Shown here: one piece after another, positions 6,879 to 43,800 of the stretch | How positions within the stretch are numbered: the first letter of the stretch is position 1 | Layout of the letters: each line of letters begins with the position of its first letter | NCBI GenBank assembly: GCA_964247055.1 | Contig: OZ176054.1 | Coordinates: 6,448,001-6,512,000 of the forward strand | Length of the DNA: 64,000 nt | DNA from: Paragordius varius | Taxonomy: Eukaryota; Animalia; Nematomorpha | Reading direction: 5' to 3' | Notes under the pieces: model-generated | The model's database searches: none | Told to the model about the DNA's origin: nothing | Seen by the model: the letters and a program-made list of their open reading frames with translations, nothing else | Program-made: the position numbers and the translations under genes

Positions 6879-7335
6879 TGTTAGAGGTTTAAAATAAATT
6901 GATATTTAAATTTTTAAAAGGGTGAGGATGCGGATAATAAACCATGTATTACACGGTATTATTAAGGGGAGAATGCAATTTTTAAGAACGAAATACACGT
7001 CGATAACCATCAAATTGATTTTAAAAATATTCATTGAGGGTGGTTTATTTTTCGCTGATATTACATAATTAAGCCTTGTATTGTAATTATATCATGGTAA
7101 TCTTACGTTTAATAATAATTTGGCATTATTATATGGCTAGCGGATGTGATAATAACTTCAAAATGATTTAACTGGTAAAAATAATCCCGTTATTAAATTT
7201 ACCATTACTAAATTTATCTATTTAAAAATTATTAAAAAACTAAATTAAAGCCTTTTTTTAAACAACACCATCCTAGGTGCCAGGTAAAGTCATTTCTGGT
7301 TGGTAAAATACAACATATTTTTGAAAAAAGCTCAA

Positions 7336-8227: not shown

Positions 8228-8619
8228 GATCACTGAATGATCATAAAAGGTTGATATTTGCGCACTTAACTTGCGTGTGTTTGTCGTATAATGTCAGATG
8301 AACAAAAGGACGTCTGATCAAATTAATCGTCTGCGTAATTTACCGACGTTTCATTTTATGTAAAATGGTAATTAAGGCTTTTTGGTTGTCTTAATATTTA
8401 ATATAAAGACACTCGTTTGCACAATTATACCATGCTCAAATTTATTCTGTAACTCAATTATTATACTTAACGCCTCTAATCATTAAATTTCTCAATGGTA
8501 CTCTCATAAATATTTTATATACGGTTTTCATATCAATTATATTAGCTACCAGATTAATAAACTTATTTTAAATACTTAATGCATAAAAGTGCTGTTTAAT
8601 TATGAAAATAAATTATTAT

Positions 8620-16785: not shown

Positions 16786-18563
16786 ATGCTTGAATGCTAA
16801 TGTTATAACGATGCGTGTTTAAAAATATATTGTTAAATAAGCATATTTAAATATTTAATTTATATTTTAAAAAATATAGTAAAAACACTGAAATCTTACT
16901 ATTTCTCTTGCAAAACAAATTTACCGGCATTTCAAAAAACAGCTGTTTTTTTAAATGACCATGGTCAAAAAATAAATAGTCACTGACCTGGTCATGACTT
17001 GGTCAGCACAACCCTACTTACAACATTAAATATTATTTAATTGTGGACAAAATTTCCTTTATATCATACGCTACTGTATTAACAATTCACCAACAATAGT
17101 GTGAATTTACCAACATTAATGTACATACTATATCATAAAAAATCATTATATACTTTATGTAGGAAAAATTAAGGATTGTTTACATTTTATTTGTGTAATT
17201 TCAAATTCATTGAGGAATTGATTGAAGAAGTAGAATTGGTGAAACATTTTTAAAGCTAGATTCAAAGATTACCGAATTCTGAAACAATGAGAGCCAATAA
17301 CCTATAAATAATAATAACCTAAAACATTTAAAAATACTATCCTACTAAAGATTACGTTCCACCAGCGCACCAATCTTTAACAAGTTATCGATTGATCCAC
17401 ATTTTTGGCGTATTAAAAACCGGTCAAAACAGAATTAGAAACCTAATACGGTGACAATTCTAGCCCAAACACCAAATGTCATTAGGATTTCCGCTTGGAA
17501 GAACCGTTGCTGTGCAAAAGGACAGGGTTTATATTTTAATAACAAACTTGTATTAACAAAATAGGGTAAATTAAATAACTCATTCCATAATGCCGCAAAA
17601 ATATTTAAAGTAGTTTGTTACTTATCCTCCAATAATATTGAAACTCAAGTAGTTTTATAAATTTTTCCTATTATATTGGTGTGAAGAGACAGGCTAAAAA
17701 GTTGGTAACATGCTGCAAAAGCCGTGAGCGAATAAATAACACTATTTCAATGAAAGGGAACAAGAAGAAACGGTATCAAGGATCTGTCCAACAAAATGTG
17801 TACGCTATATACCTAGTTTTTCTATTTATGCCTAGGTTTGCGCTTTAAACCGATTATCTGTCTGACCTCGAAACGAGTAAAGTCACATTAATATACTCAA
17901 TTAATATCACGAAATCAAATAAATACCAACTATAATCAATGTGAAGTTTACCAATTAAGAAATAGCTAAAGATAATATATAAATAAATTATAAACATTTC
18001 TGAACAAAACCACAAAATTTAAAAATGGAAAATGGTTTGTGATGTTTAAACATAATAACTTTCCTGAAAAGTCATTAAATATTTTTATTACTTAAATATC
18101 AATGATACTTAATAAGGTATATAAATCAAACTTGTTATATGATTATAAAATATCTTAAATAAAAAAGGCTAATCAATAATTTTGACGCAAATAAAAAGAA
18201 ATACATATGTCTCTTAAAAGTATTGAGTGCAAAAAAAGGTTGTCTAAAAATATATCAAAGTTATCAAACTATGAAATAATTTATTGCAATGAATTATTGA
18301 AATCGAGATAAGGTTTCTGATTTCTGTGATGATGATTTCGTTTGATTTGGAACGAGTGTGGCGTTGTATTTTTGTCAGTAATGAAATTAATTTTCATTTT
18401 ATCCGTATGAAATGTTATTAAACCAAAACCTGCTGCATCTCTTGAAAACTCACATTTATTCGAACGTTTGATTCCATAAATTTTGGATCCGGAACCAAAG
18501 ATTACGCAATTTAATTGGTCTTCGATGTAGTGCTAAAAAAATTTAAAATTTTATCGTATTACA

Positions 18564-18601
<38 letters not shown>

Positions 18602-19105
18602 GGTTTCTTTTAATATTGCCAGATAGCTTATACAGCAAAGAACATTAATATTGGTGAATAACGGGAAAAATATTTTAAGCACATTAACATAGCTCTGCAT
18701 ACTATCTCAATGTAGTATTATAATGTATAATTAAAAAATGCAATAATTTTAATCATAGACAAGTGCATATTTATTGTTATACTTGCATGTTATGATCATG
18801 TCCACTGACATACAAAGACGCATAATTTGAAATTATATCACGAATCTTTTTGATCTTTGGAAACGACTTGTATTTCCCGCAACTTTTAAATGGATGATGC
18901 CCGCTCACAACTACGTAATCATGATTTCTAGTGAATTAAAGAGAACACTATTACATTCAATTTTTAAACTGATCAATTATATTAATTAAAGTATAAAGAC
19001 AAAACGTTATTAAAAGACAAATATATTTTTTGTAAACCATATTTTTAAAACTTAAATTTTCATACAACTTAGCTCTTTGGGCTTAAAATAAAGAATGGAC
19101 TATAT

Positions 19106-19180
<75 letters not shown>

Positions 19181-19566
19181 CAATTGTAAGTAGAAAAAAA
19201 TTCTGGGTTTAAAAAAGTATGGCTACACCACAAAAATCCTATGAAGGAAATGGGCACGAATATAAAAATTCTAATTTAGACATTTGACCCTTAGGGTTAC
19301 ACCCGCCTAGGATGGATAAGTATAGTATTAAATAATAAGGTTCTAGAAAAATTTAAAATTTTTAAAGTTTATTATTTATGTGGAAATACTAATTCAGGAG
19401 CCAACACAATGCACAAGCGGCATTTTACAAAAAACTGGACGGGCCGCATTCAAAAATATTTCGGCATTAATATAAAAATTTTCATATCAAAAAAAAACTT
19501 CAAAAAATACGATCACAATATACTTGATATTTTTTTACTGATTATTACTAATTGATTGACAAAGAG

Positions 19567-21162
19567 CAGGGCTTCTTAAACTATGAGTCGTGCGAAGGAT
19601 AAAAATACAATTTAACAAAAATTTTTTCACTTTCAAAATTATTGTTATAAAGAAAAAAACAATCATCGTAGATAATTATATCATAAAATCTTCTGGTTCG
19701 GAAAGACTGTTTATACCAGCATTTCTAATCATTTTAATCTACATATTTACAAAAAGGAAAATGCTAGATTTGTGATCTGTTTCCGGAAAACCGGTAGATT
19801 CATTCAAATCCAAATGTCCAAAAAATCTAACCCTAACTCCCAGTTCGGGCCCACCCCGTGTAAATAACGGGTTTTTTGAAAGCAGAAGTCCAAAAAATCG
19901 TGTCGTTGATACAATTTTCCGGAAAACGTGTTGGACTATTCGATTTTAAATATGATTATTTTTACTTTTTTGATTGCGCCAAACCTAGTCGGATTACTTT
20001 TTTAATTTAAGCTCTCTTTTTACCTATTCCGCTCGTAAAATGCCATTTTTTTCAAAAAAAAAATTTTTTTGCCCAGGGTAGAAGACCGTTAAAATTCACT
20101 GAGGATTCGAGTCATTCTCAGTTAAAAGGCAAAAATTTTAGTTTTGCGTTTTTTTAATATTGGCGCTGGGTGAACAGATAGCCGCTAAAACTGCGCCACT
20201 ATATAAAAATTGCGTTGTTTTGGAGCTAATTTACAGAAAATTTATGAAGGATATGAGCTCATTAAAATCTCGAAATATAACCCGTAACTAGGTAAAAATC
20301 AAGGTCAGCGTTTTTATTAGCCGTTAATTTGGGCCCTTTATGCCCTAAAACGCCATCATATAACGATTTAGTTTTGAGGTATTTTTTCGAATAACCCAAG
20401 AGACGATGGTATCAACGATGATTTAAATATTTTTTCTATAAAGGCAAAGAATTTAACTCAGCGCTTTTTTCATATAGGTCTATGGTTAGGGGTCAACCGG
20501 TTTAAGACTGAGACGCCATACAAAATAGGCGTATTTTAGAACTAATTTTTAAAAAAACATAAGAAGCCATACGAGTTCAGTTAAACACATTTCTGGGGAA
20601 TTAGTATAATATCATTCTTTCCTTTAAAAAGGGACCACAAATGAATTACTTTTTATATCCCTTGATCCCAGTTGTATGAACAATTTTAAATTAGAACTTT
20701 TAACGATGATTTCGTAAAACTAAAATCTTAAAATAAATCCAATGATTGAATATTAACTTTAATAAGGGACAGATTAAATATGGTCAATTTTGAGTAAATA
20801 ATTCAAAGGCGAAAACCCGTAAAAAATTAAAGACATTCTTTTTATTAAATATGTTTAGTATTATTTTTTCATCTCCATTAACTCTATTTATTGCAAATTA
20901 TTAAGAATAATTATCGGTGAGACTACGCCACACCGAAGCGTGACAGGGCCAGCTAGTATCTTGTATAAATTTACTACGAATCAGAAAATGTTTTAGAAAT
21001 TTATAAAAAATGTCGATTTATTTTTGTCATTTCTCAAAACCGAAATAATCCTGATAAATATAATAAACAAAATTTCTAAGTGTTATTTCGAAGAAATTAT
21101 TATCGTTAAGAAACTCGCAATCATAAATGGGGTCGGGAACTACAAAAGTTTAAGAAGCCCTA
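19567..21162. mobile_element. Non-autonomous hAT element (1596 bp including a nested Helitron) in intron 4 of ACP5 copy 2
   Basis: TIRs CAGGGCTTCTTAAACT / AGTTTAAGAAGCCCTA (15/16). Perfect 8-bp TSD ACAAAGAG at 19559-19566 and 21163-21170. Absent from the paralogous intron of copy 1. Confidence 0.9.
19738..20956 (+). mobile_element. Non-autonomous Helitron nested in the hAT element
   Basis: Inserted as A|TCTACATATTTAC...CTAG|T, with a subterminal hairpin CACACCGAAGCGTG (20929-20942). The 5' ~330 bp is shared with 30952. Confidence 0.8.
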
Positions 21163-24100
21163 ACAAAGAGAGATGCGTATTCATGAAATTGGTTTTAAAA
21201 TAAATTTACTTTGATTTTGTAAACCCAAAATGTGCGGAATGCTTAAAGGGTCCACCTACTTTTATTTTGGTTAAGTTTAAACTTTAAACGTTATTTAGCT
21301 TGATAAAACTAGTGTACACAATAGGTGGTAAAATTTTTCATGATACCTACTTTAATTCTAATGCCAAACTTTCCAACCATTCAAATTGTTTTTCACCCAG
21401 GACAGTTCCATTAGTTTTGCGAGCTTTTTCCTTCTCCTCGTAAAAATTGGTGTCCAACATGATAAATGAGATTGTCACATTGTCAACATATTTGTCATGT
21501 CGATACAAATGGATAACATAGGTACGTTTGTAAAAGAAATATGGAAATACCCTATTAACAGTACAGAAATTGAATTTTAAGCAAGTTTGTTATTTATTTA
21601 CTTCCATTAATATTGTAATGAATTACATTTTATATTTTACTATATTGGGCCAAATAGCATTTGCTGTAGTTTTTTTAAAAAAGTAGTAAATTCCAACCAC
21701 TCAAAAGTCCGTTTGTAGCAAAAGACAAAACAATTTACAAATAACTGCCAAATAAAAAAAATAAAATTAAATCAATAATTTTTTAAAATTAAATTTTAAT
21801 TTAGTCTTTGTAACGGTTTTACTAAGATAATGTATCTTTTTTAAAAATTCTATTACATATAAAAACCCTTTTCTAAAAAACTTTTAAAGATTTAAATATA
21901 AATAAATACAATACCAACGGCGAGATCTGTGCGAATAAAAAATTTGTGAAAGGACATCCTGATGATAATCGTGATTGCCCGCTATTGTTAACCATTATTC
22001 AAATTATCAGTGTACACATCTTCAAACGTTTTCTATCATTATATAAAGATTAGTAAATGCAAAATACATCATACAAAATGTGTCAAATTTCGGAATTTGT
22101 CTGTTTGCACTCTTTGGTAAACCCAAATTTTAGTTATAGCTGATGGGCTTTCAACATCCGAAAAAGTATAGTTTTATTCTTTGAATGGCGTTTGACCTAC
22201 AAAGATTTTTACGAATTCTAGAGACCATAATTTACTCAATTAAAACTTTGAACCTGCCTAAACAACAACCCAAAAATTTGACAGTTTTTTTATGGGATTT
22301 CAATGCAATGCAAAAAAATCCCTAAATCGTTTATCTTAAAAACAAATGGGTATAAACTGAGCCTTTAGGTGAATGAATATGATTGATTTTTTATCACATA
22401 ATATATAAAATATATTATTAATTGGAAAATAAATATCTTTTGTTACCTGAAAGCGATGATCATGTAAGGATGCTACCCCATCACTGTAAAAATTATCACC
22501 GAGTAAAAGAGCCACAGTTTTGCTCGGATCCTTAACAAATTTAGGCAAAATTTTTGCAATATTTGATTGTACATCTGATATATAGGGTTTTTTTGAGGTC
22601 CCTCCGGTATCACCGATAGCGATAACTCGAAATATTTCCTCCGAATCTAATCAATCATAGTAAAAATTTAATTTATAAAGTCAGAATTATCAATTATATG
22701 ACAACGCTGTTAAATAAATACACAATCCTGTCTTTAAATGTAAATTTTGAATTACAACAAATATTTCACAAATATTATTATATTGAAAAAAAAAACCATT
22801 AATCAAAATTCATTTCTGTACATTAATCTTTTACGCTTTGTATCCTTAATAACATTTGCGTGTAGTGTTATTCATTACCGAATTCTATCTCAAATTCTAT
22901 CATCCAATTTTATCAATATTGACTCTTTGTCTATATTCATACAATTTTATGATAGTCAGGTGAGTTTTTATATTTTTTTAAAAAACTACATTTTTCTCAA
23001 ATTTTACCGTTTTTCAAGTCATGACGGAGATGATAGGTTACATCAAAATCAAATACACTCAATTTACTGTCTTCAAAGGTTGGTGCTTCCATATCCGGAA
23101 TACCTGAGCCTGAACTAGACCATTGTTGTTGATTTGCAAACTTAGTTCGACCAACTTCTTTTGCGTTGAATGTGTAAGTAACATAATCAATTTCGTCGTA
23201 TGGAATGGCCGGGTGATATATGTTATCATACTTTTGTGGATCGAATGTCAAAGTATTTGTGTGGTGGTTATTTTTACTCTTTTTGCTTTTTTTGCTTTTC
23301 CTTCGAGCCTCTGTTACATCGAACAAAGCTACCAAGATACCAAATAAGAGAAATAAATAAAGTATGGTTTTAGTACTGAAAAAATATTTATTCATTTTCG
23401 ATTTGGAGAACACAAAATTATAATCCTTAAAAATATATAATGGGTCAGATAACATTTGTGCTGTCCTTTATATATAAACTAATGAAATGGTTTATTTTTG
23501 GTTAAAAATAGAATGTGAAATAGCTTCTCAATGTACATTATCTAGATTTCCTCACACGCCAGACTGAAGTATACATCTAGTTACTATTTATAAATTTGAT
23601 ATTGGTAAATGTATATATTTATTGCTATTTTTAATTTGATAATCTAAAAATACTCAATCAATCGATCCTAATATGGTAAAGGTTGATACCCAAGTGGGCT
23701 TATTATTATAATTAGATTCCTTCTCTTAATTAATTATTTTGGGTTATTTTTAAATACATACCAAATTTAATACAACTGTATGTTAAAAAAACATTCTTAA
23801 ATTAAATAAATATCTCCTAATACTTTTAGATAAAAAATTTGGTATAAAAAATTGAAAATATAAAAATTTATTATTATAATATTGTATAAGAAACAAAAAT
23901 CTACCTATTGACAATATATGATGGGGCTTGTTTAAGGAGGAGAGTGCGGGAGATATCTTCTAATAAATTAAAATAGAATTTGAGATTAATTAGTTATCCA
24001 ATTGAACACTGGATGTAAAATAGCGGTTAATAAATTTTAAAGAAGTCTTTCCAAGTTTTTTATTTGTTACTCGCCTATATGGAATATTAATGTTTTTTAT

Positions 24101-26310
24101 TAGATTGTATAATGGAGCGTGTTAGATCGCCGTAAGAAACTCAAAATATCTGATATGATGACCAAGGGTTCCCGTCGGTTGGCTTCTGATATATTATTAT
24201 AATTTTGTGACAGGTAATATAGTTTTACCTTTTATCAATATTTAAAAATAACTTACTGGAATTAAATTATTTTTGCTATGGTGCTTAAATTAATGATAGA
24301 TTGGCTTCAGATCAGCGACAGAACGATAAACTAGGATATTTGCCTTATCTTTTGGTTTAATATACAGGTTGCGATAGATTTGGCATAACGTTAGTTTGTG
24401 ATAATCTTTTGATGTGCTATTTCACGAAAAATATATACAAAAAAGTGACAATAAATGTATACATAAACTTTTAAACAGCATAAACAATATTTTTTATAAT
24501 AGAGCAGTCAATTAAAAAGTGCAGGTTGAGTTTGATTGGAAATAGTGTGCAAGTTTAAAAACCTCCCTAAAGAAGGTCATGTTTTTTTGGGTCAAACATA
24601 TTTATGACAAAAGATTCTTGTAATCAAACCATTTTATGGGTTAGCATATGCTGTTTTTTCTGATGGTTTTGAGTGATTGTGAGTCTATGATAATAAAAGT
24701 ATTTTAAAGTAAAATTTGTATTATAGACCCTTTTAGAATATGTAATGAGCAATTATTAAAAGCAGTTATAGATTTTGCAAGCCATTCCGCGCCAATGCAA
24801 ATGTAATCTTCGATTTTCCACGATAAATATGGAATTAGAATTAAAAACAACTTTAAGAAAATTAAAAACTGAAAAATATTTAACTATATTAGCCATTCTT
24901 TTAACTTTTTTGGCTTGAGAAGTTTTTATAGTACGTATGATTTTTGGCATATCTTTAGAAATCAATGGCTAACCCATTTAATATTTTGTTACTATTTTTG
25001 GTATAGAACTAAATATAGATTACTAGATTTAAACGCGTTAGTACCTTTCCGTAAACAGCATCAATTAAGGTTTAATAACCTTTTTGATTTCTAGTACAAC
25101 CATAAATATAGAAATTATTATACAAATTTATTATCAAACAGACTGAAATTTTTTTAGAAATTTGTTATATGCCTTAATCTACGAAACAAGGTACCGAATA
25201 TTTTTGTGTATTTAAGGTTTAAGGAAAACAATATATATCTATTGGTTTTACTAATTCGAATCTTAAGAGTATCTAAAAATTAATTTAATATTTGATTGCT
25301 TGGTTTGTTGGTTGGTTAAAAAGTCGATTAACGACCGTTAGCTATCTTAACTTCCTCCATTCGGTTCTGTCATGGCCTCTAATGATACATTTTTATAGAG
25401 AAGATGTTTTAGAAAGGATAAATGTATAAATAAATTTAATCTCATTTATCTATGACATGAAAAAGATAATATAAATAAATAAAGTGTAAAGATAAAATGA
25501 CAAGTGTTGCGGATAAAATCCATAACATTAAACTTATCGCGTAAGTGGTTGTGAGTTTAAATTAATTTATAATTTTTGTAGACTTTAAAATTGTTGATAT
25601 TATACAATAGATTTCCTATCATAATTTTAATAATCAGCGATGTTTAAATAGCTCACTCTCTGAATGATATCAGGCAGTTTTTAGATTTTTTAGGTTTGGA
25701 TATGCAGCTGTTAGAGCAGGGGCCTCCAACACAAATATCTTTGCCGTTGTAATAATTTTTTTGGTTTTCTTTATTTTCAGCTCAATTATGGATATGTTCT
25801 AAATAATGGTAAATTTTTGATTGAAATCCAATTTTTATTTTTTTACCATTTTTAGAGCACTTTTGCGTGCCGAAAAAAGCGTGTGTTAGAGGTTTAAAAT
25901 AAATTGATATTTAATTTTTGAAGGGTAAGGATGCGGATTATAAACTATTAACCGGAATTATTAAAAAAGGTATTTATTTTTGTGTCGCTGATATTATATA
26001 ATTAAGCCTTGTATTATAATTTTATTATGGTAATCTCACGTTAAATAATAATTTGGGATTATTAAATGGCTGGCGGATGTGTTTATATCAATATTATTTA
26101 ACTAGCAAAAAAATCCCATTATTAAATATACCATAACTAAATTTATCTATTCAAATTATTAAGAAAACTAAATTTAAAGCCTTTTAGTAATAAACAACAC
26201 CATCTTATTTTTTTTAAAATATTATATTTTAAAATATATATATATGCCAGGTAGAGTGATAATTCTTCTGTTTGTTGGTAAAATACAACATATTTTTGAA
26301 AAAAACTCAA

Positions 26311-27214
26311 CTATTTATTATACTCAAAATATTGTTCATCGGTTTCTACACGGTTCCCCCCATCTCTCAGTAATATATGAATGGCACAGAAAACTGATGG
26401 CTGCCAGTTGTCAAGTTATTTTCCACGTTTTTGATATTGAAGTGTTGCTCTAAGCGCCTGCCTCATTGTGCGAAGTAGTATTCGTCAGATGGCTCCAGGT
26501 CAAGAGAATAGGGCGGATGCGGAATTTCCAATCGAAATTTTAGACTTTCCCTGTTTCGCTGTGGAAGACGGAGCATTATCATGTAGCAAAATCCCTTACC
26601 ATTCTGGCCATTCCGGTCGTTAAAAAATAAATGCATGGTTTAAATTTATCATTTGTTGGCAGCGTTATGTATTAATGATTTCACTAGTCCTCAAGTGGAT
26701 AATGCACAATACCGCTCTCACCAGAGCATGGTCTTTTTACGGCGATTTGACCTTCGTGTTGAACTGGATTAACGAGGTAATAGCCATGATTTTTTAAGCT
26801 TTGGAATACAAAAGAATAATACTTCTCATCACCTGAACAGATTGTTGCAAAAAAATTTGATTGCGTGATTTTAAAGCAGGAATACACAAGGCACTTGCAT
26901 TTTCGATTTGACAATTGTGTACCGAATTGGTTGTTGTCTGCTCATTGTCTTTTGTAATACATATGTCTGTCATAAGTTGTTTTTGAGTTGGGTTATAATC
27001 TAATATCTTTTGTACATTAGCATCCTCGAAGTTGTGTATATAAGAGCGATCACACTCTTTCACATCATATCAAAACTTTTAAGATTTTAAAACCATGTTT
27101 TACATGTGTTAATTGATAGAGCATATTCAACATATGCCAACAAACGATAACTTTCAACGGTCTTGTACATCTGATGACGTGCCGCAAATTTTTTTCATCA
27201 CCGAAATGTGACAT
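26311..27214 (-). mobile_element. Paralogous degenerate mariner transposase pseudogene
   Basis: Same motifs as 7336-8227, plus FFATICSGDEKY (first catalytic D) and FEDANVQKILDYNPTQKQL. Same position within the duplicated block. Confidence 0.88.
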
Positions 27215-27587
27215 GATCACTGAATGGTCATAAAACATTGATATTTGCGCAATTAACTTGCTTGTGTTTGTCGTATAATGTCAGTTGAACAAAAGGGCGT
27301 CTGATCAAATTAATCGTCTGCGCAATTTACCTACGTTTCATCCTATGTAAAACGGTAATTAAGGCTTCTGGTTTCCGTTGTTTTATGATTTATTACTATA
27401 AAGGCGTTCATTGCATAATTAATCCATCCACTTATTTAAAACTCAATCATTGAACTTTACACCCTAATCATTGATTCGATGGTGCTCTCATAAATATTTT
27501 ATTAACGGTTAAAATATCAGCTATAATAGCTACCTTATTAATAATTATATTTTACAATACTTTATGTATAGCGATTATCATGCTTAT

Positions 27588-32105: not shown

Positions 32106-33315
32106 GGATTAAATGCAAAGTGTATAATCATATGACATAAATTCAAAAAAAATAAATAATTTAAATTAAAAAATAAAAAATTTTAAATTTAAAATTGATA
32201 TAGATTTTAAAGATAACTAATGATAAAAAATTTAAACGGACAAAAAAATAATTTTTTTATAAAAATTAAATGTATTTTAAAATTTTTTTTATAATCGTGA
32301 AAAAGCGGGACGTCTGGTCACCCTATCTATAACGATATTTTTAAGCATTTTTCTGGCTTCAAATTTTAATCATATTAAAATATAATATAAAGGATACCTG
32401 CTTCTGTTTTTTTCAATAATTATTTTTTAGAAATTCACATATGATTTGAAGTCCGAATACAATACTTATTAAGTAAATTATTTCGAACGCAAAATAAAAA
32501 CAAAAATAAATTATAATTTTGTGGAAAAAGAATTCCATGCAAAAATATTCAAAAAATTTTTTTCGGCGGTCAAGAAGACCGCAGTCGACCGTTTGGACAC
32601 CCCTGCTGAAAGATTATATCTTAATAACAAAGAAATGTGTGAATTTCCACTAAATTATGAAAAATTAATATGGATTTTCTAAGAGAGCGTGACAATAATC
32701 TGAAACCATCAAAACAATTTAATTCCTTAATAATTATTAAATATACGTTCGAATAAAAATTATTTTTAATGATGAATAAGCATTAGAGAAAATAACGTGT
32801 TGGACGATTCCTCTTTCGCCCAAAACTCCGATTCTCAAGTTTTATAGCAGATTAACTTAAATAAATACCGAAAATATGGAAAATATAATATCGTAAAGCC
32901 TTAATTGATAGACCTCAGCAATCAAACCAATAATAGTATTGTGTTAATTTTGTTATTCACAAAAATTGTATATTATGAATTAAGGATATTTTCGTTTATA
33001 ATATATCAGTTTTATATCAGTTATAAGACGCAAAATACATAATAATAATCAATTTTTTACTCATGTTAAATGAATAGAACAGATCTAACTTACACAGCAA
33101 TTTATATTAATTTTGGCTTGAGTTTGACAGTTTGATGTATGCATTAACTATCTATATAATTTTCTTTCGCAATTTTCATGCGAAAAGAATGCAATTCATG
33201 ACAATTAAATAGTTAAAAATAAAAATAAAAAACCACACAAAAAATAATAAAAAATATACATATCGCGCACAAAAAATCTTTTCTTTTTATATTACAATAA
33301 AAATCAAAACAAAAC

Positions 33316-34419
33316 ATGAAGTTTATACTACCAATCTTAGTGTGCGTTTGGACTTATATTTCGTGCCAAGATTATTATAACATTGGGTATACGTATGCGA
33401 CTCAAGCTCCACCAGTTCCTGGAAATCCATATAATTATCCCTCGAATTATGTTAATTATCCTGCCAATGTGAATCAATATGCTTCATACGAAACAAATAG
33501 GCCCACAATTAATCTAAATTATCCGACTCAGGCTCCATCTCAGGTAAATTGATTTTTAATTTTCTGCTTTTTTGCTAAATATTGTTAGGAAGCTATAATT
33601 GGAAATTGTTAAATTTTTAGTTGTATGGTAATTAAAAAGTAGTTCAGTCGGACCGATTTGTATTGAAGGTAAGCATTCACCATAATTCCATAGACACCAT
33701 AGAAGAGATTATTTGGCTAAAAAAATATGCCATTACGATTACATGCAATTGCCATGTAGAAAGAAAGATTTAATATTTATTAACCAAATTTTTGTCTAAT
33801 TTCTTAAAATTTTATTTTTAAGCACTTTTATAACCCAGCCCAATGAAACGCTATAATAAGGGTTGATAAACTGAGGCTACCGGGTAGCCCAATAGGGATC
33901 CACATCTTAGATTCTTTATTTATTTTAATTTTTGCTATTAAATATTTGCTGAAGAAACGTTTTACTTCGTTAACAAATTATTGATCAATTGGACATATAA
34001 ATTTTTCTGAATAATTATAGGCGATGATGAGCAATGAATACAGAGGTAATCCAACTATTTTCGATTTTCCCAACCTTAATGCCACAGCGGATGCTATTAA
34101 CTTACGGGTTGCCACTCGAGGATTAGGTATGTAGCAAAATCAAAAAATAGATCCTTTTTTTATATAAAATATTCAATATAGAAATATAATATGATCCGAA
34201 ATATCTTATTATTGTTTTTAATATTTTTTTTTAATTAAAACGAGTTATTAATCTATTTAAAACCATATTATGTTTTATGGTAATTTAGGAACTGCGGTTT
34301 CAAGCATGGCTGATATATTAACCAAGAGATCTAATTCAGATCGTCAAAAAATAGCGGCTAATTACAAAGATATGTATGGGAAGGTATAGTTTAAATTTAT
34401 TTTTCGTAATTTCGTCTTA

Positions 34420-34477
<58 letters not shown>

Positions 34478-37232
34478 TTTTGTCAATTTTTATTATAATA
34501 GGATATTCAACATAAATTTAAATGGGAATGGAAAATATTTGGACATGCTAAGGAAATGTTCAATGATCTCTTCGTGCCCAAGATTGATTATGATGCTCAA
34601 ATTATATACTCGTCTATTAAGGTTTCAATTTTTTTATAGTCAAATACCGCAAAAGAAATATTTTTAAGGGATATGTTATAATATCTAGTTAAATTTACCA
34701 TTTTTTATACATATAATTAAATTGTTACAAGGTTAGCAATAAACAATTAACCAGTTTATTTATATTGCAGTAAATAAATTTATAATTTCCATCATTTTTT
34801 TAAAAAATCAGATCATGGCTTGTATATAAACCAATAAAAAGGCATACATGAAACCGATATTTCTATATCAACCTTTTCCTTCAGGTGTGTTTCAATGGAA
34901 AAAAATTGATTAAATTAAAATATTAAGCTCTCTATCTGGATTTAAAAGTGAATTTAAATATCAAATCGTTAATATTCTGATATATTAATGTTCTTTCGCA
35001 GAATCTAATACAAATAAATGTAAATTAATAAAAATGGATCATATGAATAAAAAATTAATTTTTTGCTCTGCATATTTAGAATATGAAACACAAATTCATC
35101 TGGTAAAATATAATTAAAATTCTTCGATAGGGAAAATTATTTATATTTCTTATCTATTTAGCGGTTTTATTCAAATTAAAATATTTAATTATTGATATCG
35201 TCAATGAAAAAAAATATTACAAAGCTCAAATAAATATATGTACGGCTTCAAGGTATATTTTTTAATGGATTTGATGATGTTTTACAACACAAGATTTCAT
35301 CAATCTTTGCAAAATTAATTTTCCTAATGAAAATATCATTACTTATGCAATGTGTTCATATTTATTTCAAAAATTTAAAATTTTTAATTATATAGGGGAT
35401 TGGAACAGATTTGGATACAATAACAGGTGTTTTATGTGGAAAGAGTTTTGAAGAAATCCAACAAATTAAAGCTGCCTATCAACGAAGTATATCTATAATT
35501 TAAAAATAAATAAAAATATAGATATTTTTTTTTGAAATTTTATAATGGGATATTTTGGTTTACTAAACTTTACAATTAAATGGTTAACAACAACTGTATT
35601 ATTGTAACTCAAACAAATAATCAAATCTTAAAAATAACTTTAAAAAATATTGTATAACACAGAATATAAATCAACATTGGAAAATGATCTTAAACGGGAT
35701 ACCTCCGGACCTGTCCGTAACCTATACATGCATCTTTTGAATGTATATGCACAAAATTTTTTTATTAAAGTTTGACACTAAAGTCATTTTTTATGGTAAA
35801 TTTATTTTGCAAATTAGTTTTTTTTTTCAATAATTTGAACCAATTTCTTTTAGACTCCACGCGAGAATGGTGTGAACATGCAACAAGTTGAACAAGATGC
35901 CAAAGTATGCAACATTTATCTAACTCTATATACAGGCATAAATAAAAACATAACGACAAATATTTTTTTAAAAGTGTTTTTTTAAAAATGTAAATTATCG
36001 TTTTGGATTGCAGATAAGGGTAAATATAAATTGGTTACATCAATTATACAGTACACATCAATGTTAGCCAATTCAAATCCGTTTAGGCCGATTGGCAATA
36101 CAGTAGATGAGGAGGGACGGTTGAAATTACGATTTTTGCCTATCTTACAACATTAAATATTTTTTAATTGCGGACAAAATTTCCTTTTCATCATATGCTA
36201 CTGTATTAACAATTAACTAGTGAATTGACCAGCATTAATGTGCATACACTATCAAAAAATAATTATATATTTTATGACGGAAAAATCAAGAATTGTTTAC
36301 ATTTTATTTGGATAATTGCCCATTAAAAAATATATAAAATTATTTTTCTAAAAAAACTTTAAACTTAGGATATCGTTGGAACCGATATAAAACATTTTCA
36401 GGATGAAAATGCTCTCTTTAGAATTTTAGCAACTAGAAGTAAACCGCACATACAACGCGTCCTCGATTCCTACCAAAGACAGGCCAATATTCCATTAATT
36501 GCTGCTCTAAACAAAGATTTGTCTGGTGACATAACTCAACAGGGCAAAGCTGTCCGAACCGTTAAAAATTTATGTATGTGGAGAATAAAATTTAATTTAT
36601 TAATGATGGAAAAATAAGTTTTAGCAATATTTTTACGGATTAAAGAAAATATACATTGATTTTAAATTTGTTAATACTGATAATATTTTTTTTTGATTTT
36701 TTTAAATTTATTATCTGTTAATATACAGTGGAGTGTTATGTGTCACCACCAACGTTTTTTGCGCAACAATTCAACAAAAACATGAAGGTATTTATTTAAT
36801 TAAATATTTAATGCTTCGGGTATCATGTTGACCAAATAATACTTTTAAATCAATCAATCATATAACCATATGTCCCCTTTTAAAAAATATTTTAATTTTA
36901 AGGGAATTGGGACCAGTGATAAAAAGTTGTTTAGACCTATCATCGCCCGCAGTGAAATAGATTTGCAAGATATAAAGGACAAATACCAGGAAATATTCAA
37001 GGAAAATTTGAAAGATCGAATTGGAGTAAAACATTTTTATAGAAAAACACATATGTATATAAAATAATTAAAATTATTACAAATTTATATTTTATGTTAT
37101 TATGAACTTAAGGAATTCAAATTATTTTTTAATTTTTTCAATACTCAGAGAGAAACTTCAGGAAATTTCAAACTTCTTATGCAAGGAATGTTAGACGGAA
37201 ATCGGGATATGATCTCCAAAAATTATCATTAA
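33316..37232 (+). CDS. Annexin (four repeats) with a predicted signal peptide and Y/P/N-rich N-tail, ~413 aa; exons 33316-33543, 34021-34126, 34289-34383, 34502-34621, 35396-35486, 35663-35742, 35854-35904, 36369-36573, 36729-36787, 36903-37025, 37149-37232
   Basis: Annexin repeats: DAINLRVATRGLGT..ILTKRSNSDRQKI; YDAQ..KGIGTD; KRDTSG; DENALFRILATRS; MKGIGTSD..IIARSEIDLQDIK..RETSGNFK. All phases are compatible. The linkage of exon 1 is inferred from phase. The exon 8 donor is uncertain. Confidence 0.88.
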
Positions 37233-37814
37233 TTAAAAATTTATGCCTTAAATCAACCTAATCCAAATTAATTATTATAAATATAATATTTATTAATTCA
37301 TTCAATATACAAAAAAATATGTAAACCACAATGCTAAATTGTATTTTTGCGCATCATTCAAATGAAATTCTTGATGGGGTACTACACTTTTCAATAATTC
37401 TGTGTCGCTAAATAATAAATTATACATGTTATTTTAATACTAATAAAATAGCACGCGTTTCCATAAAGCCTTCATTATTACATTATTAAATCACAAGGAT
37501 ATATATAGTATTGCGTGTTATGTTTGAATTTACACAAAAATTTCCTATCTCTTTCCAACAGCACTATTACGGCCTAGAGTAAGCGAGGAGTAGTAAGCTT
37601 TCCTGATTCCTTAATTCAAAAGACCTTACTACAATAAAAAAATACTCGAAACCAATGAATAATACTCAAAATACGACCTAATATTTTGCGGCTATATATA
37701 TATTATTGGTAAAATAAAAGCATTTAACGGGCTGATACTATGACAAATACATAAAAAATTAAATGAATTAATTATTGAGCACCATAAAAAACCATTTATA
37801 AGGCAGGCCACAAT

Positions 37815-40800
37815 TTAAATACCTCTAAAAAAATGTAAATGTAAGTTTTCATTACCCCCACTTCCACTTCCACTTGCTGCGTGTTGTTGTTCATGCATAG
37901 GCGTTTGTCCACCCCCAGTCAAGAACCCACCACCTGGCGTGTGCATAGGTGTTTGATTCCCTAAGCCCGCGGAATGCATTGGCGTTTGACCGCCGAAAGG
38001 CATCATCATGGGTGTAGCGGAACCGGGTTGTTGGCCAGTACCAGCTGCTGAGTTGGTGTGCATAGGCGTAGCTGCACCATACAGGGGCGTCTTTCCACTC
38101 CCCATCATTCCATACATGGGTGTTTGACCGCCCATCATAGGTGTTCGCCCATACACTGAACCACCACGGCCATCAGCCATGGGTGTAGCACCACCCATAC
38201 CACCAACACCCCCTAAACCACCTAGGTTGCGACCCCTGGGGAATGGATGGAATATAATATTTAGATTTAGTTATAAGTCGATCAAAACATAGCAACTTAA
38301 TGATCTTTTTTGAATCATCAAATTATTTTAAACCATCTTTTGATGGGATACAAAACAAATGTTTTTGCATTTAATGACAAAGGTAAAATTTATCAATAGA
38401 ATAGTAATTTTTCAAGTAAAAAAAGGCAAGTATTCTAAAACAACTCTTTTTCTTAAGATAGATTTTGTTGTATATAATTAATTTTGAACGTATTAACAAG
38501 GTATAAAAAGAAAGATGTAAGAGATGGAAAAAAACTACTTGTACAAAAATAAATTTTTATTAACAAAAAAATAATATTATTTTGGGCCTTTATGTTAAAA
38601 AATATGACTTTTAACCTATTTTTTTACTTTAAATATAAAAACCCGTAAATAACTATTTTAACTTAATAAATTTAAACCAATTTTCAATAAAGTTACCATT
38701 AAATTATACAAAAAAATCTTACGATATATTGGCTATTCGACATCTGTCTACACTTATAGTTTGACAATTGCTGTGCAATTCAACTCTTGCAGTTGATTCG
38801 GTAGCATCCTTAACAATTCCCATGTATCCTAATTAAAACATATAATTTTTATGATTCGCAAATCGTTTATTTTCTTCTTCCCCTAAAAATATCAACGCAA
38901 ATGACAAATAAGTTAAAAATATACGATAAAGAATAACTTGCGATGCAATTTTTAATTTGTTTTTATTAAAATTTTCCATAGAGTCAAAACGAAAATCAAT
39001 ATTGTCCAACATTGACACAATTAATTCCAACCCTTTCATTAACTTAACCCTGTATTACATTTATCAAATATAAGTATCTAATCTTTATTTTTGTAAGAAC
39101 GACCGCTGCCTATTTTAATATATCTGTATACATTTGAATAATATTTTTTTCATTTACTAAAATTACTCTGGATATGGTGGAGTAAAATTTAGTAAAACAA
39201 TTTTTATATAAAATGTTAATCAACGTACCTTTGTAAGGACCGCTAGTTATTTTAACCGTTTGTCCAATGAGTGTTTGATCCCGCGTCGTAGTTCTATGGG
39301 CCGTAAACCGTTTTGGGCCATAATGAGGGGTGTGGGAACCGCCACCACCACCTGGAGTCATTCCAGGAGAAATCATGGCGCTGTTTGGAGTCAGGGTGGA
39401 ACCATCCTAAAACAATCAAATACTTTTTCATGGACATTTGAATAAATTGATGAGTAAGAAAAAATAAGTTAGTTAAACATTAATTTGTGTGCCTTGAATA
39501 TTGCTGTTTTGATTAGATAAATAAATTATTTTAAAAGTGTGTTTAGACAAATAATTAATGAATAAAATACATAATATGATGATAGGGAAACTATGGATAT
39601 GTTGAAAGGGAAAAAAAATAAAAAAGTGATTTGCAGAGCATTTCACTAAAGAGTAAAGGTAAGTAAAAAACCCCTCTTCCTAAAAAAATCTAGGTTTTAA
39701 TCAATGTAGATTATTGATGAATTTTAAAAAAAGTATGAATATATGAACCATAATATCTAGTCTATAAAATATTTAATAATCGATATAGCAGAAAGCATAA
39801 AATAGTAGAATTGGTATAAACTTAAATATTTCAAAGTTTCTAATAACTAATGGGATATTATTTAGTTTAAAATTTAAATTTTTTGGAGATCAGCAATGCA
39901 AAATTTTATTGAAAAACTTAAGTTAGTTACCAAATCATTTCCCCGTTGTGGACTTGGCGCTATACGTGGTGACATTGGAACAAAAGTTGAGGTTAGTGAA
40001 CCAAACGGATCATCGTCCCGTTCTACTGGCTGGTAATAAAATATTTTTAATAAGATTAGATATATATGGTGAAAAATAAGCTTGTAATAACTACAAAGAC
40101 TGTGGTATATTTATATATTAACCTATATGTCACGGTGTCATATATGCGTAAATTTCATATTTTTTTACATATCTAATCAAAGAAATTATTATAAATCAAA
40201 ATTTATGAAATATAAATTATATTTGTTTTAGACATGTTAAAAGATATATTTACGAAAAATTGGTAAAAAGGTAATATATCATAAGAGAAATAAATACCTT
40301 TTGCATTCCACCAACCAATGCCAAATGTTTTGCTCGACACAAAAAAATACCACCAGATTCAGTGTGTAACCTGGAATGGAGGAATACAAAATTACGAAAA
40401 ACGTGTTGAATGGTCCCTTCCTTGCCCTATAAAATGAAAAAAAAATCATTCTATTATATCAATATATGAATGATTATGCAAAGAATTCATCATAATTTAT
40501 TGCCAACAATTAATCAATAACTTTTGGTGTTTTTAATAAAAAAAAAACCAAAAAATCAAAATTTCGGTTCTAAACAATGTTATAAAAAACAGGGATTCAG
40601 ATATATTTGACCTAAATATCTTATAGGTCATGAAAAACAAAAATTTCGGTCCAGTATATAATTGGTTTCGCCCCGGGTCAAAACCAATTATCTTCAATTT
40701 TCCACCTTCTAAACACAAAATTATTTGGCCCTTTTTGTATGAAAATAATATAAAGACAATAATTTTATTTACTGCATGGGGTCCTTCCACGACTTTAACC

Positions 40801-43800
40801 AAGTCTCTAGCCTGTAACCTATTTTGGCAAGAATCCAAACATATGGCCCGTGAAGTATCGCGTTTTTTAAGCAAAGCTTGTGGTTTAACACGTACAACTT
40901 TGCCTGCTGTGTTGAGGATTTGAAATACCTCTTTTTCTATTCGTACGATAACACCCACATTTTGAGGACTAAAAAGCGATTTTAAAATACGTAAAATTTA
41001 GTTTTTTATTGGCAAAATAATAAAAAAAAACATTTTCCCATTAACACTGTTTAAGGTCACCTATATAAAGGCTTTCAATTTCGTTATCAAATATCCATAA
41101 ATTTACTCAAATACAAATTCCAAATTTGCGTTTTACTTATTTTAAATTGTTTTCTACATTTTTTTGTTTATACATATCAAAATTATGAATAAAAAGTTTT
41201 TATCTTCAAATTATAATTTTTTATAAAAAGTAAATAAAGCACTGCTTAATAAAATTATTTATAAAATTTAACTAAAAAAGATATACTCCAAATGTACTAA
41301 ATCACCCAAGGCATATTGTCCAAGAACATCAGAACTTCGATGGGCAGTTTCCCGGCTAAGTTGCAAATCTTTGGGTAGGACTTTGCATTCATGCATAGTC
41401 AAGTCGGAGAGGAGAACAATAGTATTTTCTTCAACGCTAATAACTAAACCAGTGTCACCTTCAAAGCGTCCATTTAAAACCTAATATCAAAATTTATGAT
41501 CAATATTATGAGATGTTATATCAAAAATTTATGATATTCTATAGAGTAAAAGTCTAAAAAAGCGTAAAGCATGTAAATTAAAGGTAATATATAATGATCA
41601 AATCATATGGTTTACAAGAAAAATTAAAAAAAATATGACTCTTTTTATACGTTTTAAACTTTATTGTATATTATTATTTATCCGTAAACTATACAAGCTT
41701 CCTTAGTTTCAAGCTTAAAATACACCACTTTCAGATCGCTTGTATTATAATATTTTAATTCAACATACAGTATGCAATATTCTAGTCCTGAAATTTTATG
41801 CAAAAAGTTTGCCCATACCTTAACATGATCCCCAACTTTAAAGAATTTTTTTAGTTCATGAGCTTGGAAATTGAGTAAATCCTTCAATTCCTCATGGTCG
41901 GGTTGGATAGTTATTGTACTTCCATCAATACTAACCACCTTACCTTGCAGGTATAATAGATCACCTTCCGTCACTTGAACCGCATCTCCAGGTGCAAAAC
42001 TATATTATTTTTATAATAAAATAAAAAAAACCATTTTTTTAAACTTATTTAAATATAAAATTATTGTTTTGGGGTAAAACATCATTTTTTTCAAATCCAT
42101 ATAGTATATATATAAAATTAATAAGAAGTCGAAAGAAAGTTAATATATTTTTTAATGAAAAAACCGTATCTTTAAAACCTCAATTTTATTTATTATGACC
42201 TATCGTCAAGATTGCTAACTAAGGAATGGAAATTTGATTCAATACATTTTAATTTATAGTTTAAGATAATAAAGATAAATTCAAAGATCAGAAGTATTTA
42301 GTTTTTTTTTAAAAAAATATTTGTCTTTTATATTTATATAGTTTATTCGTTATAGTTTATTTTTAAATTTTATTTAATTAAATATACTTACTTATGCATG
42401 TCAAGTAATTGGTGAGGAGCTTTAATGGTTATATCTTCAATCTTCCCGGCATGGTCTTCGAATTTTTCCAATTCATTAAGAGTTGGTACTATTCCTATAT
42501 AAGGGGAGGCGCAAAAAGTGAATAATATAATTTAGAAATTCAAAATTTTGATGAAAATATGCCATTTACAATTCAAATTCACCCTTGAACAATTCAAAAC
42601 CCATTTACAATTCAAATTCACCCTTAAACAATTCAAATTCACCCTAAAAATAAATTATGTGTTTTCGGGCTAATATTACTCATGATTAATAAGAAATATA
42701 TTCTAATCGCATAGTTTAGTATTTTTTCAGTATTATACTAATTTTAAACGTATTTTCATTTTTTAAAAATGTAAAAAAGATATAGGAAATTTTTAATCTT
42801 AAAAATACATAATTTATTTTTAGGGTTTTGAATTGTTCGAGGGTGAATTTGAATTGTTCGAGGTTTAAATTGTTTAAGGGTGAATTTGAACTGTAAATGG
42901 TATATATATGGATGAAATATTAAATACCATCGGCTACTATGGCTGATATGTTGAAATTTTTGAATAGAAATCCACGTTTGTTGTATCTAAATACAAAAAA
43001 TATTAAATAATATATTTTATCTATGTATAATTAGCGTCGCAAGGTAGCACAAAATCACTTGATTTAAAATTGATAAATAAGATAGACTAATATAATATTA
43101 TTATAAAAATGGTTATTTAAAATCCATGAAACCATGTAAAATAAGAATTATTATTTAATATTATATCCATTTTAATGACCAAAATGAAAGTTTGTCATTT
43201 AGCATATTAGCTAAATCCAAACCCTATATTTAATGGTTTAACGCAATAACAAAAGATTAAAAACGCAATTGGGAATAGCCGTATGTTCAATTGATTATAA
43301 ACCAATCACAAATCTCCTCACATATATTGAATATAAATTATAATTCAAATTTATTTTATATAACAAATATGCTAGACTTTCCACAAGACCGCAACAAAAA
43401 ATATTTTTAGATATGTAAAATATCCTAAAACTTTTATAAATACTAATATTTTTTACTCAAGATGTATATAACACAGTTTTTAATATAATTTACATATGCA
43501 ATCTATATAGACCAAAGCCACACAAATTTGTATATAAATAACTGATATTGTTAAAACATTATTATAAATTAGGGAAATTTAAAAATACAATGTGAGTAAT
43601 GATACATTACTAATTTATTATTGATTATTGTCAGATAGCATGTAAGGTAAAATTCCGCAAAATTTAATGAAGAGCTAGCAATATATATTTAGTGACACTG
43701 TAATTACATTTTTCCAAAATATACAACTAAATAACCTATTCCCTTCAAACACATAGTAATCTCCATCGGTTGAAACTTCGCCACCAATAGCTTTTATGGC

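What the first reader, a model, noticed from the sequence alone, without database searches (positions are those of the whole stretch)
33316..34126. Annexin apparently fused to a classical signal peptide: a candidate ER-secreted annexin
Exon 1 encodes MKFILPILVCVWTYISC|QD, a textbook n/h/c signal peptide, followed by a Tyr/Pro/Asn-rich low-complexity tail reminiscent of the ANXA7/A11 tails. It ends in a phase-0 donor (CAG|GTAAAT) matching a phase-0 acceptor at 34021 that leads into repeat 1, which carries an N-A-T sequon (seen). Annexins are cytosolic and normally lack signal peptides (established). A conventionally secreted, glycosylated, Ca2+/phospholipid-binding annexin (GxGT plus acidic cap kept in repeats 1, 2 and 4, lost in 3) could act on host or extracellular membranes (inference). 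It neighbours a secreted phosphatase in the duplicated block.
Basis: partly seen in the sequence, partly recalled or inferred. Interest (0 to 1): 0.75.

Follow-up and report, generated by a model that had tools for sequence, protein, structure and literature searches.

The report
Hairworm annexin with a secretion signal
A horsehair-worm-like genome encodes a normal calcium- and membrane-binding annexin whose first exon adds an export signal and a tyrosine-rich tail, so it is probably secreted; two related annexins in the hairworm Gordionus are built the same way, but no RNA or protein data confirm it, and secreted annexins are already known from cyst nematodes.

Summary
Window 33316-37232 (+) is an 11-exon gene for a 413-residue protein. 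It has a signal-peptide-like leader of 17 residues, a 59-residue Tyr/Asn/Pro-rich linker, and a complete four-repeat annexin core. Repeats 1, 2 and 4 keep G-x-G-T plus the acidic cap. There is one N-A-T sequon.

No RNA run holds the locus, so the 33543/34021 junction is not shown directly. Comparative evidence supports it:
- The closest relatives are two annexins of the hairworm Gordionus (about 60% identity per exon).
- One lies next to Spt5, as here.
- Both have the same 11-exon layout, with a short hydrophobic first exon joined in phase 0 at the same point. These models come from RNA-seq-guided annotation.
- One has a textbook signal peptide.
- The N-A-T sequon is present in all three and in none of 225 equivalent sites in other annexins.

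The remaining rivals are two. Exon 1 could be a separate 78-residue secreted peptide gene. Or an SP-less isoform could start at ATG 34024, since Gordionus is annotated with such an isoform.

Signal-peptide annexins are known in Heterodera (4F01), so this is a new member of a known kind, in a second phylum. Other notes of this scan flag a similar leader on another annexin of this genome. Interest is moderate.

The parts
33298..33300 (+). In-frame stop (TAA) 15 nt upstream of the start codon, with no AG in between. It rules out a 5' extension that would bury the hydrophobic segment.
33316..33366 (+). Signal-peptide-like leader, residues 1-17 (n-region MK, 13-residue hydrophobic core, c-region ..ISC). 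Cleavage is predicted by rule of thumb after Cys17.
   Evidence: Kyte-Doolittle maximum is 2.78, against a median of 0.46 in 140 other annexin N-termini.
33367..33543 (+). Tyr/Asn/Pro-rich low-complexity linker (59 residues). It forms the rest of exon 1, which ends at the phase-0 donor CAG|GTAAAT.
   Evidence: The weak Atlas look-alikes are arthropod cuticle, GYR and pro-resilin proteins (a lead only).
33544..34020 (+). Intron 1 (477 nt, phase 0). It contains an alternative acceptor at 33822/33823 that would add seven codons and then a stop.
   Evidence: No RNA was available to choose between the acceptors.
34021..34126 (+). Exon 2, the start of the annexin core. It holds the possible internal start ATG 34024 and the N-A-T sequon at 34078-34086.
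   Evidence: It is 68% identical to Gordionus P0157 residues 40-64.
34289..34383 (+). Exon 3 (repeat 1)
   Evidence: Pfam Annexin E 1.6e-07
34502..34621 (+). Exon 4 (end of repeat 1, including the acidic cap)
35396..35486 (+). Exon 5 (repeat 2, G-I-G-T)
   Evidence: Pfam Annexin E 1.4e-05
35663..35742 (+). Exon 6 (repeat 2, acidic cap)
35854..35904 (+). Exon 7 (linker between repeats 2 and 3)
36369..36573 (+). Exon 8 (repeat 3, no canonical calcium loop)
   Evidence: Pfam Annexin E 7.5e-12; 61% identical to Gordionus
36729..36787 (+). Exon 9
36903..37025 (+). Exon 10 (repeat 4, G-I-G-T)
   Evidence: Pfam Annexin E 3.6e-08
37149..37232 (+). Exon 11 (repeat 4 acidic cap, stop TAA)
37815..41974 (-). 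Spt5 gene, tail-to-tail with the annexin. It is not part of the annexin gene, but it is the synteny anchor to the Gordionus orthologue.
   Evidence: Pfam Spt5 CTD, KOW2, KOWx, KOW4 and KOW5. Gordionus L009 has annexin then Spt5 on the minus strand.

Best explanation
The window holds one 11-exon gene (33316-37232, + strand) of an AT-rich genome closely related to the horsehair worm Gordionus (Nematomorpha). The gene encodes a 413-residue annexin that enters the secretory pathway.

Shown from sequence:
- Exon 1 supplies an N-terminal signal peptide (about 17 residues) and a 59-residue Tyr/Asn/Pro-rich, probably disordered linker.
- A 477-nt phase-0 intron can join exon 1 to the annexin core.
- The core is a complete tetrad with type II calcium-binding loops in repeats 1, 2 and 4.

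Inferred steps:
- The leader is cleaved in the ER.
- Asn96 (N-A-T, at the start of repeat 1) is glycosylated.
- The protein is exported. In millimolar extracellular calcium it would bind exposed acidic phospholipids more or less constitutively.
- In an animal that grows inside an insect's body cavity, this would place an annexin at the worm's surface or in host fluid. There it could coat phosphatidylserine-bearing membranes.
- The Tyr-rich tail may tether it to the cuticle or matrix.

An SP-less cytosolic isoform from ATG 34024 may coexist with the secreted form.
For: - Annexin identity. Pfam Annexin matches five exons. The Gordionus relative P0152 aligns over residues 38-355 with the whole annexin V core, E 1e-50.
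- Calcium sites. G-x-G-T plus an acidic cap at +39 is found in repeats 1, 2 and 4.
- Leader. It is the only SP-like ORF among 66 ATG-ORFs of at least 50 codons in the window, and it has exon-like G+C. Among 140 other annexin N-termini, only two reach the same hydrophobicity.
- Closest relatives. They are Gordionus XP_065313401 (P0157) and XP_065314273 (P0152), at 50-68% identity per exon.
- Synteny. The P0157 gene lies tail-to-tail with Spt5, as the window gene does.
- Gene structure. Both Gordionus genes have 11 exons. In P0152, exons 3 and 5-10 have lengths identical to the window gene (95, 91, 80, 51, 205, 59, 123 nt). In both genes a short hydrophobic exon 1 is joined in phase 0, across a 4-5 kb intron, to an exon 2 that begins 8-18 codons before the conserved core start.
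- Annotation basis. The Gordionus authors' models were built with RNA-seq intron hints (BRAKER; doi 10.1101/2023.06.26.546503). NCBI's own models give the identical proteins.
- P0152 begins with a textbook signal peptide.
- Sequon. N-A-T at the start of repeat 1 is present in all three hairworm proteins. It is present in 0 of the other 225 equivalent helix-A sites in about 150 annexins.
- Polymorphism. Of the four strain differences listed in exon 1, three are synonymous in this frame.
- An in-frame stop without an AG lies just upstream of the ATG.
Against: - No RNA evidence. All runs that hold the locus are DNA contigs that cover the introns, and none shows a GT..AG joint of the model.
- The exon 1 ORF closes two codons after the donor, so it could stand alone as a 78-residue secreted peptide.
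- Exon 2 has ATG ATG at codons 2-3 in a good context, so an ordinary cytosolic annexin could start there.
- An alternative acceptor at 33822/33823 has the better pyrimidine tract.
- The leader of the syntenic Gordionus orthologue (P0157) carries a Glu in its hydrophobic core and is a weaker signal peptide. Its similarity to the window's leader is marginal (p about 0.02 by shuffling).
- Gordionus also has an annotated isoform without the leader (P0158).
- In a 27% G+C genome, short hydrophobic ORFs arise easily by chance.
- SignalP was not available.
Confidence: 0.75

Rival explanations
1. There are two separate genes. Exon 1 is a stand-alone small gene for a 78-residue secreted Tyr/Asn/Pro-rich peptide (83 residues if spliced to the acceptor at 33823). 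The annexin is an ordinary cytosolic protein translated from ATG 34024.
For: - The ORF ends at 33552, two codons past the proposed donor.
- ATG 34024 sits right after the acceptor with a purine at -3. It would give a short N-terminus like that of annexin V.
- Atlas look-alikes of exon 1 are small secreted Tyr-rich cuticle-type proteins (weak, scores below 0.8).
- There is no RNA evidence for the junction.
Against: - Both Gordionus relatives have a coding first exon joined in phase 0 at the same place. Their exon 2 has no Met to start from.
- The clade-specific N-A-T sequon makes little sense in a cytosolic protein.
- Only 470 nt would have to hold a 3' end and a second promoter.
- Exon 1 has no other copy in the genome, so it is not a member of a peptide gene family.
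Confidence: 0.12
2. The gene makes dual products: a secreted form (exon 1 plus core) and a leaderless cytosolic form. The second would come from an internal promoter in intron 1 or from leaky initiation, with translation starting at ATG 34024.
For: - NCBI annotates the Gordionus orthologue with isoform X1 (leader) and isoform X2. X2 replaces the leader by a single Met from another 5' exon.
- The window's exon 2 carries two in-frame Met codons right after the acceptor.
- Intron 1 has a higher G+C (0.275) than the other introns of this gene, which range from 0.09 to 0.26.
Against: There are no transcript data for this species. The Gordionus X2 model is itself a prediction, and I could not inspect its support. 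This refines the best explanation rather than excluding it.
Confidence: 0.3
3. The hydrophobic N-terminus is not cleaved. It acts as a signal anchor, giving a membrane-tethered annexin with the core in the lumen or outside the cell.
For: Cleavage-site residues are acceptable but not ideal (Ile at -3, Cys at -1). The P0157 leader is atypical.
Against: The hydrophobic core is only about 13 residues, which is short for a membrane span, and it starts at residue 3. P0152 has a standard leader with Ala at -1.
Confidence: 0.05
4. Exon 1 is a chance ORF in AT-rich DNA and is not expressed as protein.
For: Short hydrophobic ATG-ORFs are frequent upstream of the other annexin genes of this genome.
Against: - It is 78 codons long with exon-like G+C, and it is rich in Pro and Ala codons in a 27% G+C genome.
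- It is the only SP-like ORF of its size in 64 kb.
- Three of four listed polymorphisms are synonymous.
- A first exon sits at the homologous position in Gordionus.
Confidence: 0.03

Closest known systems
Gordionus sp. m RMFG-2023 'annexin A5-like' (XP_065313401, isoform X1) and 'annexin A4-like' (XP_065314273)
   Same: - The same annexin subfamily, at 50-68% identity per exon.
- The same 11-exon structure, with a hydrophobic first exon joined in phase 0.
- The same single N-A-T sequon and the same two core cysteines.
- The A5-like gene shares the Spt5 neighbour.
   Different: - The Gordionus leaders are followed by only 10-20 linker residues. The window gene has a 59-residue Tyr/Asn/Pro-rich linker inside exon 1.
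- Gordionus has two paralogues and this genome has one.
- The syntenic Gordionus copy has lost the calcium loops of repeats 2 and 4.
- I found no paper that comments on these leaders.
Heterodera glycines / H. schachtii 4F01 annexin-like effectors (PMC2791119)
   Same: A four-repeat annexin with a predicted N-terminal signal peptide, made by a parasite. The paper stresses that related annexins of C. elegans and Globodera lack the peptide.
   Different: - A different phylum, and probably an independent gain. The nearest nematode relatives found here (Strongyloides, 28-29% identity) have no leader.
- 4F01 has no long low-complexity linker, and it is delivered through a stylet into plant cytoplasm.
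- Expression site and target are unknown here.
- No 4F01 sequence was compared directly.
Vertebrate annexin A5 / A4 (solved structures, e.g. 1ala, 1avr, 2zhi)
   Same: The same core fold by sequence (E about 1e-50 for the Gordionus relative), and the same type II loop motif.
   Different: A5 and A4 have no signal peptide, and they reach the outside of cells only by unconventional routes (established knowledge). They have no sequon at the start of repeat 1.
Annexin A7 / A11 (long Pro/Tyr/Gly-rich N-terminal tails)
   Same: A low-complexity Tyr/Pro-rich segment lies in front of the core.
   Different: In A7 and A11 the tail is cytosolic and is not preceded by a leader. This genome has its own A7/A11-like gene elsewhere (L007 2994-3542), so the resemblance is in composition, not orthology.

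Membership tests
Annexin (Pfam PF00191, four-repeat core) | Four annexin repeats of about 70 residues | tested here: met
   Pfam Annexin hits fall on exons of repeats 1, 2, 3 and 4. The closest relative, P0152, aligns end to end with annexin V.
Annexin (Pfam PF00191, four-repeat core) | Type II calcium site: G-x-G-T followed 38 residues later by Asp or Glu | tested here: met
   Present in repeats 1, 2 and 4 and absent in repeat 3. Calcium and lipid binding themselves cannot be tested here.
Proteins with a cleavable ER signal peptide | N-terminal n/h/c organisation: basic start, 7-15 uncharged hydrophobic residues, small residues at -3 and -1 | tested here: met
   MK, then a 13-residue core, then I-S-C before the site. 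Hydrophobicity maximum is 2.78. This is heuristic only.
Proteins with a cleavable ER signal peptide | A trained predictor (SignalP) calls it, and cleavage and secretion are observed | not testable with these tools
   No signal-peptide predictor and no expression data are available here.
Proteins with a cleavable ER signal peptide | The leader is at the true N-terminus of the annexin mRNA product (exon 1 spliced to exon 2) | tested here: inconclusive
   No RNA run holds the locus. Support comes only from conserved architecture in Gordionus and from phase and position.
Cyst-nematode 4F01-type secreted annexin effectors | Signal peptide plus four annexin domains | tested here: met
   The architecture is as described in PMC2791119.
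Cyst-nematode 4F01-type secreted annexin effectors | Common descent with Hg4F01/Hs4F01 | not tested
   No 4F01 sequence was fetched. The nearest nematode hits are 28-29% identical and leaderless, which suggests an independent gain.
Cyst-nematode 4F01-type secreted annexin effectors | Expression in a secretory gland and delivery into the host | not testable with these tools
   No expression data.
Annexin A7/A11 group | Orthology with the long-tailed cytosolic annexins | tested here: not met
   A distinct A7/A11-like gene exists on C1 (L007). The window gene's best relatives are the short-tailed Gordionus proteins.

The most novel reading that the evidence does not exclude
Horsehair worms may have moved a large part of their annexin family into the secretory pathway.

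- This gene and its two Gordionus relatives carry leaders.
- At least two more annexin genes of this genome (C1 cluster, L004 and L005) gain signal-peptide-like leaders if 25-26-nt micro-introns are spliced.
- The conserved N-A-T sequon marks these proteins as glycosylated extracellular proteins.

The parasite would then export calcium-dependent phosphatidylserine binders into the insect body cavity. There they could mask membranes from clotting, encapsulation or phagocytosis. This would be an animal-host counterpart of the plant-parasite 4F01 effectors.
Probability: 0.2. Interest if true: 0.7.

Novelty: new member of a known kind. Interest (0 to 1): 0.45.

Why it matters
Annexins are textbook leaderless proteins, and how they get outside cells is a long-standing puzzle. 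Natural annexins that use the ordinary ER route are rare. The documented case I found is the cyst-nematode effector 4F01.

A second, independent and evolutionarily conserved clade, in a different parasitic phylum, would show that the annexin fold tolerates ER folding and glycosylation. This clade has a conserved glycosylation site and a retained set of calcium loops.

It would also give a simple candidate for a host-interface molecule in hairworms, whose molecular interaction with their insect hosts is almost unknown.

The practical point for annotation is that the leader sits in a separate small exon. In other annexin genes of this genome it may lie behind 25-26-nt introns, where gene finders can miss it.

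Tried and rejected
- RNA evidence. The one run search found only DNA holders, and the one read-laying run showed intron coverage and no GT..AG joint of the model. It led nowhere for splicing. It gave only strain polymorphisms, from a truncated list.
- Exon 1 paralogues in the genome. None were found, so there is no family to compare with.
- Pfam on exon 1 and exon 2. No family was hit.
- Similarity of the leader to the Gordionus leaders. It is marginal (p 0.02 and 0.12 by shuffling), so it is not used as evidence of homology.
- Atlas look-alikes of exon 1. They scored below 0.8, so they are a lead only.
- Ten larger ORFs of the duplicated block upstream. Pfam found nothing. Only one exon-like ORF gave a sub-threshold Metallophos hit, so the 'secreted phosphatase' neighbour is left weakly verified and no functional link is claimed.
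- Look-up of P0004 in assemblies. It failed because only the longest isoform is on record. P0157 and P0152 worked.
- Literature. I found no paper on hairworm annexins and none with the phrase 'unlike other annexins' plus signal peptide.
- Joined model. Exons were searched one by one by reference. The CDS was joined only inside local scripts, to check frame, length, sequons and loop spacing.
- A possible disulfide between the two conserved core cysteines was considered. It cannot be tested without coordinates.

Full report
**What is there.**
Reading the region and translating it in three frames gives a clean 11-exon gene on the + strand. The exons are 33316-33543, 34021-34126, 34289-34383, 34502-34621, 35396-35486, 35663-35742, 35854-35904, 36369-36573, 36729-36787, 36903-37025 and 37149-37232. 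All introns are GT..AG (two ends were corrected by eye and re-checked). The product has 413 residues. Pfam Annexin matches exons 3, 5, 6, 8 and 10. G-x-G-T followed by an acidic residue 39 positions after the Thr occurs in repeats 1, 2 and 4 and not in repeat 3.

**Exon 1.**
- It begins with MK, a 13-residue uncharged hydrophobic core and small residues before a likely cleavage site after Cys17.
- Then come 59 residues that are half Tyr, Asn and Pro.
- An in-frame TAA lies 15 nt upstream with no AG in between, so nothing can extend the N-terminus.
- The exon has the G+C of the other exons (0.37), against 0.23-0.28 for its flanks.
- Among 66 ATG-ORFs of at least 50 codons in the 64 kb, it is the only one that passes a simple signal-peptide filter.
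- Exon 1 has no other copy in the 110.6-Mb genome.
- I had no signal-peptide predictor, so this is a heuristic call.

**Is exon 1 joined to the annexin?**
Direct evidence is missing. The single run search found five holders, all of which cover the introns and are therefore DNA. The read-laying run shows no joint that matches any intron of the model. The answer has to come from comparison.

A profile-free search of 1.8 billion representatives with exon 8 gave one clearly closest protein, P0004 (57-68% identity on most exons). A word search with it found its kin. All are from the horsehair worm Gordionus sp. m RMFG-2023:
- 'annexin A5-like' isoforms X1-X3 (P0157, P0158, P0004);
- 'annexin A4-like' (P0152).

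The next relatives are 27-29% identical (Strongyloides, a chironomid midge Diamesa, and one EukProt entry whose organism the table does not name) and have no hydrophobic N-terminus. Within this genome only the window gene belongs to the subfamily.

I fetched both Gordionus loci and mapped the proteins on them.
- Both genes have 11 exons.
- In P0152, exons 3 and 5-10 have exactly the lengths of the window gene (95, 91, 80, 51, 205, 59, 123 nt). Exon 4 differs by two codons.
- In both genes, exon 1 is a short hydrophobic peptide (22 and 30 residues). It ends at a phase-0 donor and is joined across 4.2-4.8 kb to an exon 2 that starts 8-18 codons before the conserved core start. The window's acceptor at 34021 is in that same place.
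- Neither Gordionus exon 2 contains a Met, so there the upstream coding exon is indispensable.

The A5-like gene is followed tail-to-tail by Spt5, and so is the window gene (Spt5 CTD and KOW domains on the minus strand from 37815). It is therefore the positional orthologue.

P0152 starts with a textbook leader. The P0157 leader is weaker, with a Glu in the core.

The Gordionus authors' models were produced with BRAKER using aligned RNA-seq (doi 10.1101/2023.06.26.546503). NCBI's pipeline gives identical proteins. I could not inspect those reads myself.

**A second, independent line: the sequon.**
The only N-x-S/T sequon of the window protein, N-A-T at 34078-34086, lies at the start of repeat 1. 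It is conserved in both Gordionus proteins, where it is also the only sequon. At the equivalent helix-A position of about 150 other annexins (227 motif instances), the only sequons are those two Gordionus ones. A conserved glycosylation site confined to the leader-bearing clade fits passage through the ER. With three related sequences it is suggestive, not proof.

Of the strain differences listed inside exon 1, three of four are synonymous in the proposed frame. That table was truncated, so this is weak.

**Rivals.**
- Exon 1's ORF closes two codons after the donor.
- Exon 2 has ATG ATG right behind the acceptor.
- An acceptor at 33822/33823 would give a seven-codon end.

So a small secreted Tyr-rich peptide plus a cytosolic annexin cannot be excluded without RNA (about 0.12).

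More likely as an addition than as an alternative, a leaderless isoform may coexist with the secreted form. NCBI annotates one for the Gordionus orthologue (P0158).

**Caution about base composition.**
In this 27% G+C genome, short hydrophobic ATG-ORFs are common upstream of every annexin gene I looked at. That is why I give weight to ORF length, composition and conserved position rather than to hydrophobicity alone.

**Organism.**
The genome is 110.6 Mb in 44 contigs. Three things point to a nematomorph or a very close relative:
- the best protein relatives;
- the shared annexin-Spt5 arrangement;
- the matching base composition (27.5% here; 26.9% in Gordionus).

Other agents of this scan reached the same view. 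Published hairworm genomes are 200-300 Mb, so the species is not one of those.

**Comparison with what is known.**
Annexins generally lack leaders. The documented exception I could read is Heterodera Hg4F01/Hs4F01, a gland-expressed effector with a predicted signal peptide that related nematode annexins lack (PMC2791119). The present gene has the same architecture and may work in a similar way, as a secreted annexin of a parasite. It sits in a hairworm-specific clade, and its nearest nematode relatives are leaderless, so the gain is probably independent.

The Tyr/Asn/Pro linker recalls annexin A7/A11 tails only in composition. A true A7/A11-like gene without a leader lies on C1 (L007).

I found no paper on hairworm annexins. 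The Gordionus sequences are public, but as far as I could see the leaders have not been remarked on.

**Mechanism.**
- Shown: a leader-like exon, a compatible phase-0 intron, an intact calcium-binding core, and a conserved sequon.
- Inferred: splicing, cleavage, glycosylation at Asn96, export, and calcium-dependent coating of acidic phospholipid surfaces outside the cell.
- Speculative: a role at the host interface, and tethering by the Tyr-rich linker.

Exons were sent one by one by reference. Joining was done only inside local scripts, for frame and motif checks.

**Verdict.**
- It is a new member of a known kind.
- Interest is moderate.

Noticed in passing
L004:933-1030 (+) = G000:C1:3190933-3191030; L005:8941-8824 (-) = G000:C1:3214941-3214824: Two other annexin genes of this genome gain signal-peptide-like leaders if a 26-nt (L004:1005-1030) or 25-nt (L005:8848-8824) GT..AG micro-intron is spliced to the first core exon. 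This matches another first-reader note. Chance hydrophobic ORFs are frequent here, and no RNA was available.
   Followed up: partly
window 35940-36096 and 36139-36317: Annexin intron 7 holds a repeat whose summed contig depth is roughly 45-150 times that of the two neighbouring bins in the three deep runs. The adjacent 36139-36317 is 84% identical to window 17013-17200. It is probably a small mobile element.
   Followed up: no
window 45-8585 / 17527-27570; 12733-14910 / 29544-27590 (inverted); 15918-16781 / 32335-33263: This is a large diverged duplication (73-87% identity). Its last segment ends 53 nt before the annexin start codon. Copy 1 has no annexin exon and no copy of exon 1. The annexin may therefore never have been part of the duplicated unit.
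   Followed up: partly
window 18780-18935 (-) and 23000-23467 (-): An exon-like ORF with a GHDH-type motif hits Metallophos below the cut-off (E 0.0034). Further upstream on the same strand, an ORF starts with a signal-peptide-like stretch.
   Followed up: partly
L009 (Gordionus OX940783.2:17271955-17297405): NCBI isoform X3 of the Gordionus orthologue skips exon 4 (38 residues of repeat 1). Isoform X2 replaces the leader exon by a single Met from another 5' exon. The syntenic copy has lost the G-x-G-T loops of repeats 2 and 4.
   Followed up: partly
window 34421-34470: A (TA)n microsatellite of about 50 nt lies in annexin intron 3. Contigs of the public runs break there.
   Followed up: no
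window 32800-37500, run X5: A run labelled as a different organism (B) holds low-depth pieces of this locus, some identical to it. It could be a host or a mixed sample, or a mislabelled relative.
   Followed up: no
window residues Cys197 (35432-35434) and Cys328 (36734-36736): The only two cysteines of the mature protein are conserved in both Gordionus relatives. Whether they form a disulfide in a secreted annexin could not be tested.
   Followed up: no
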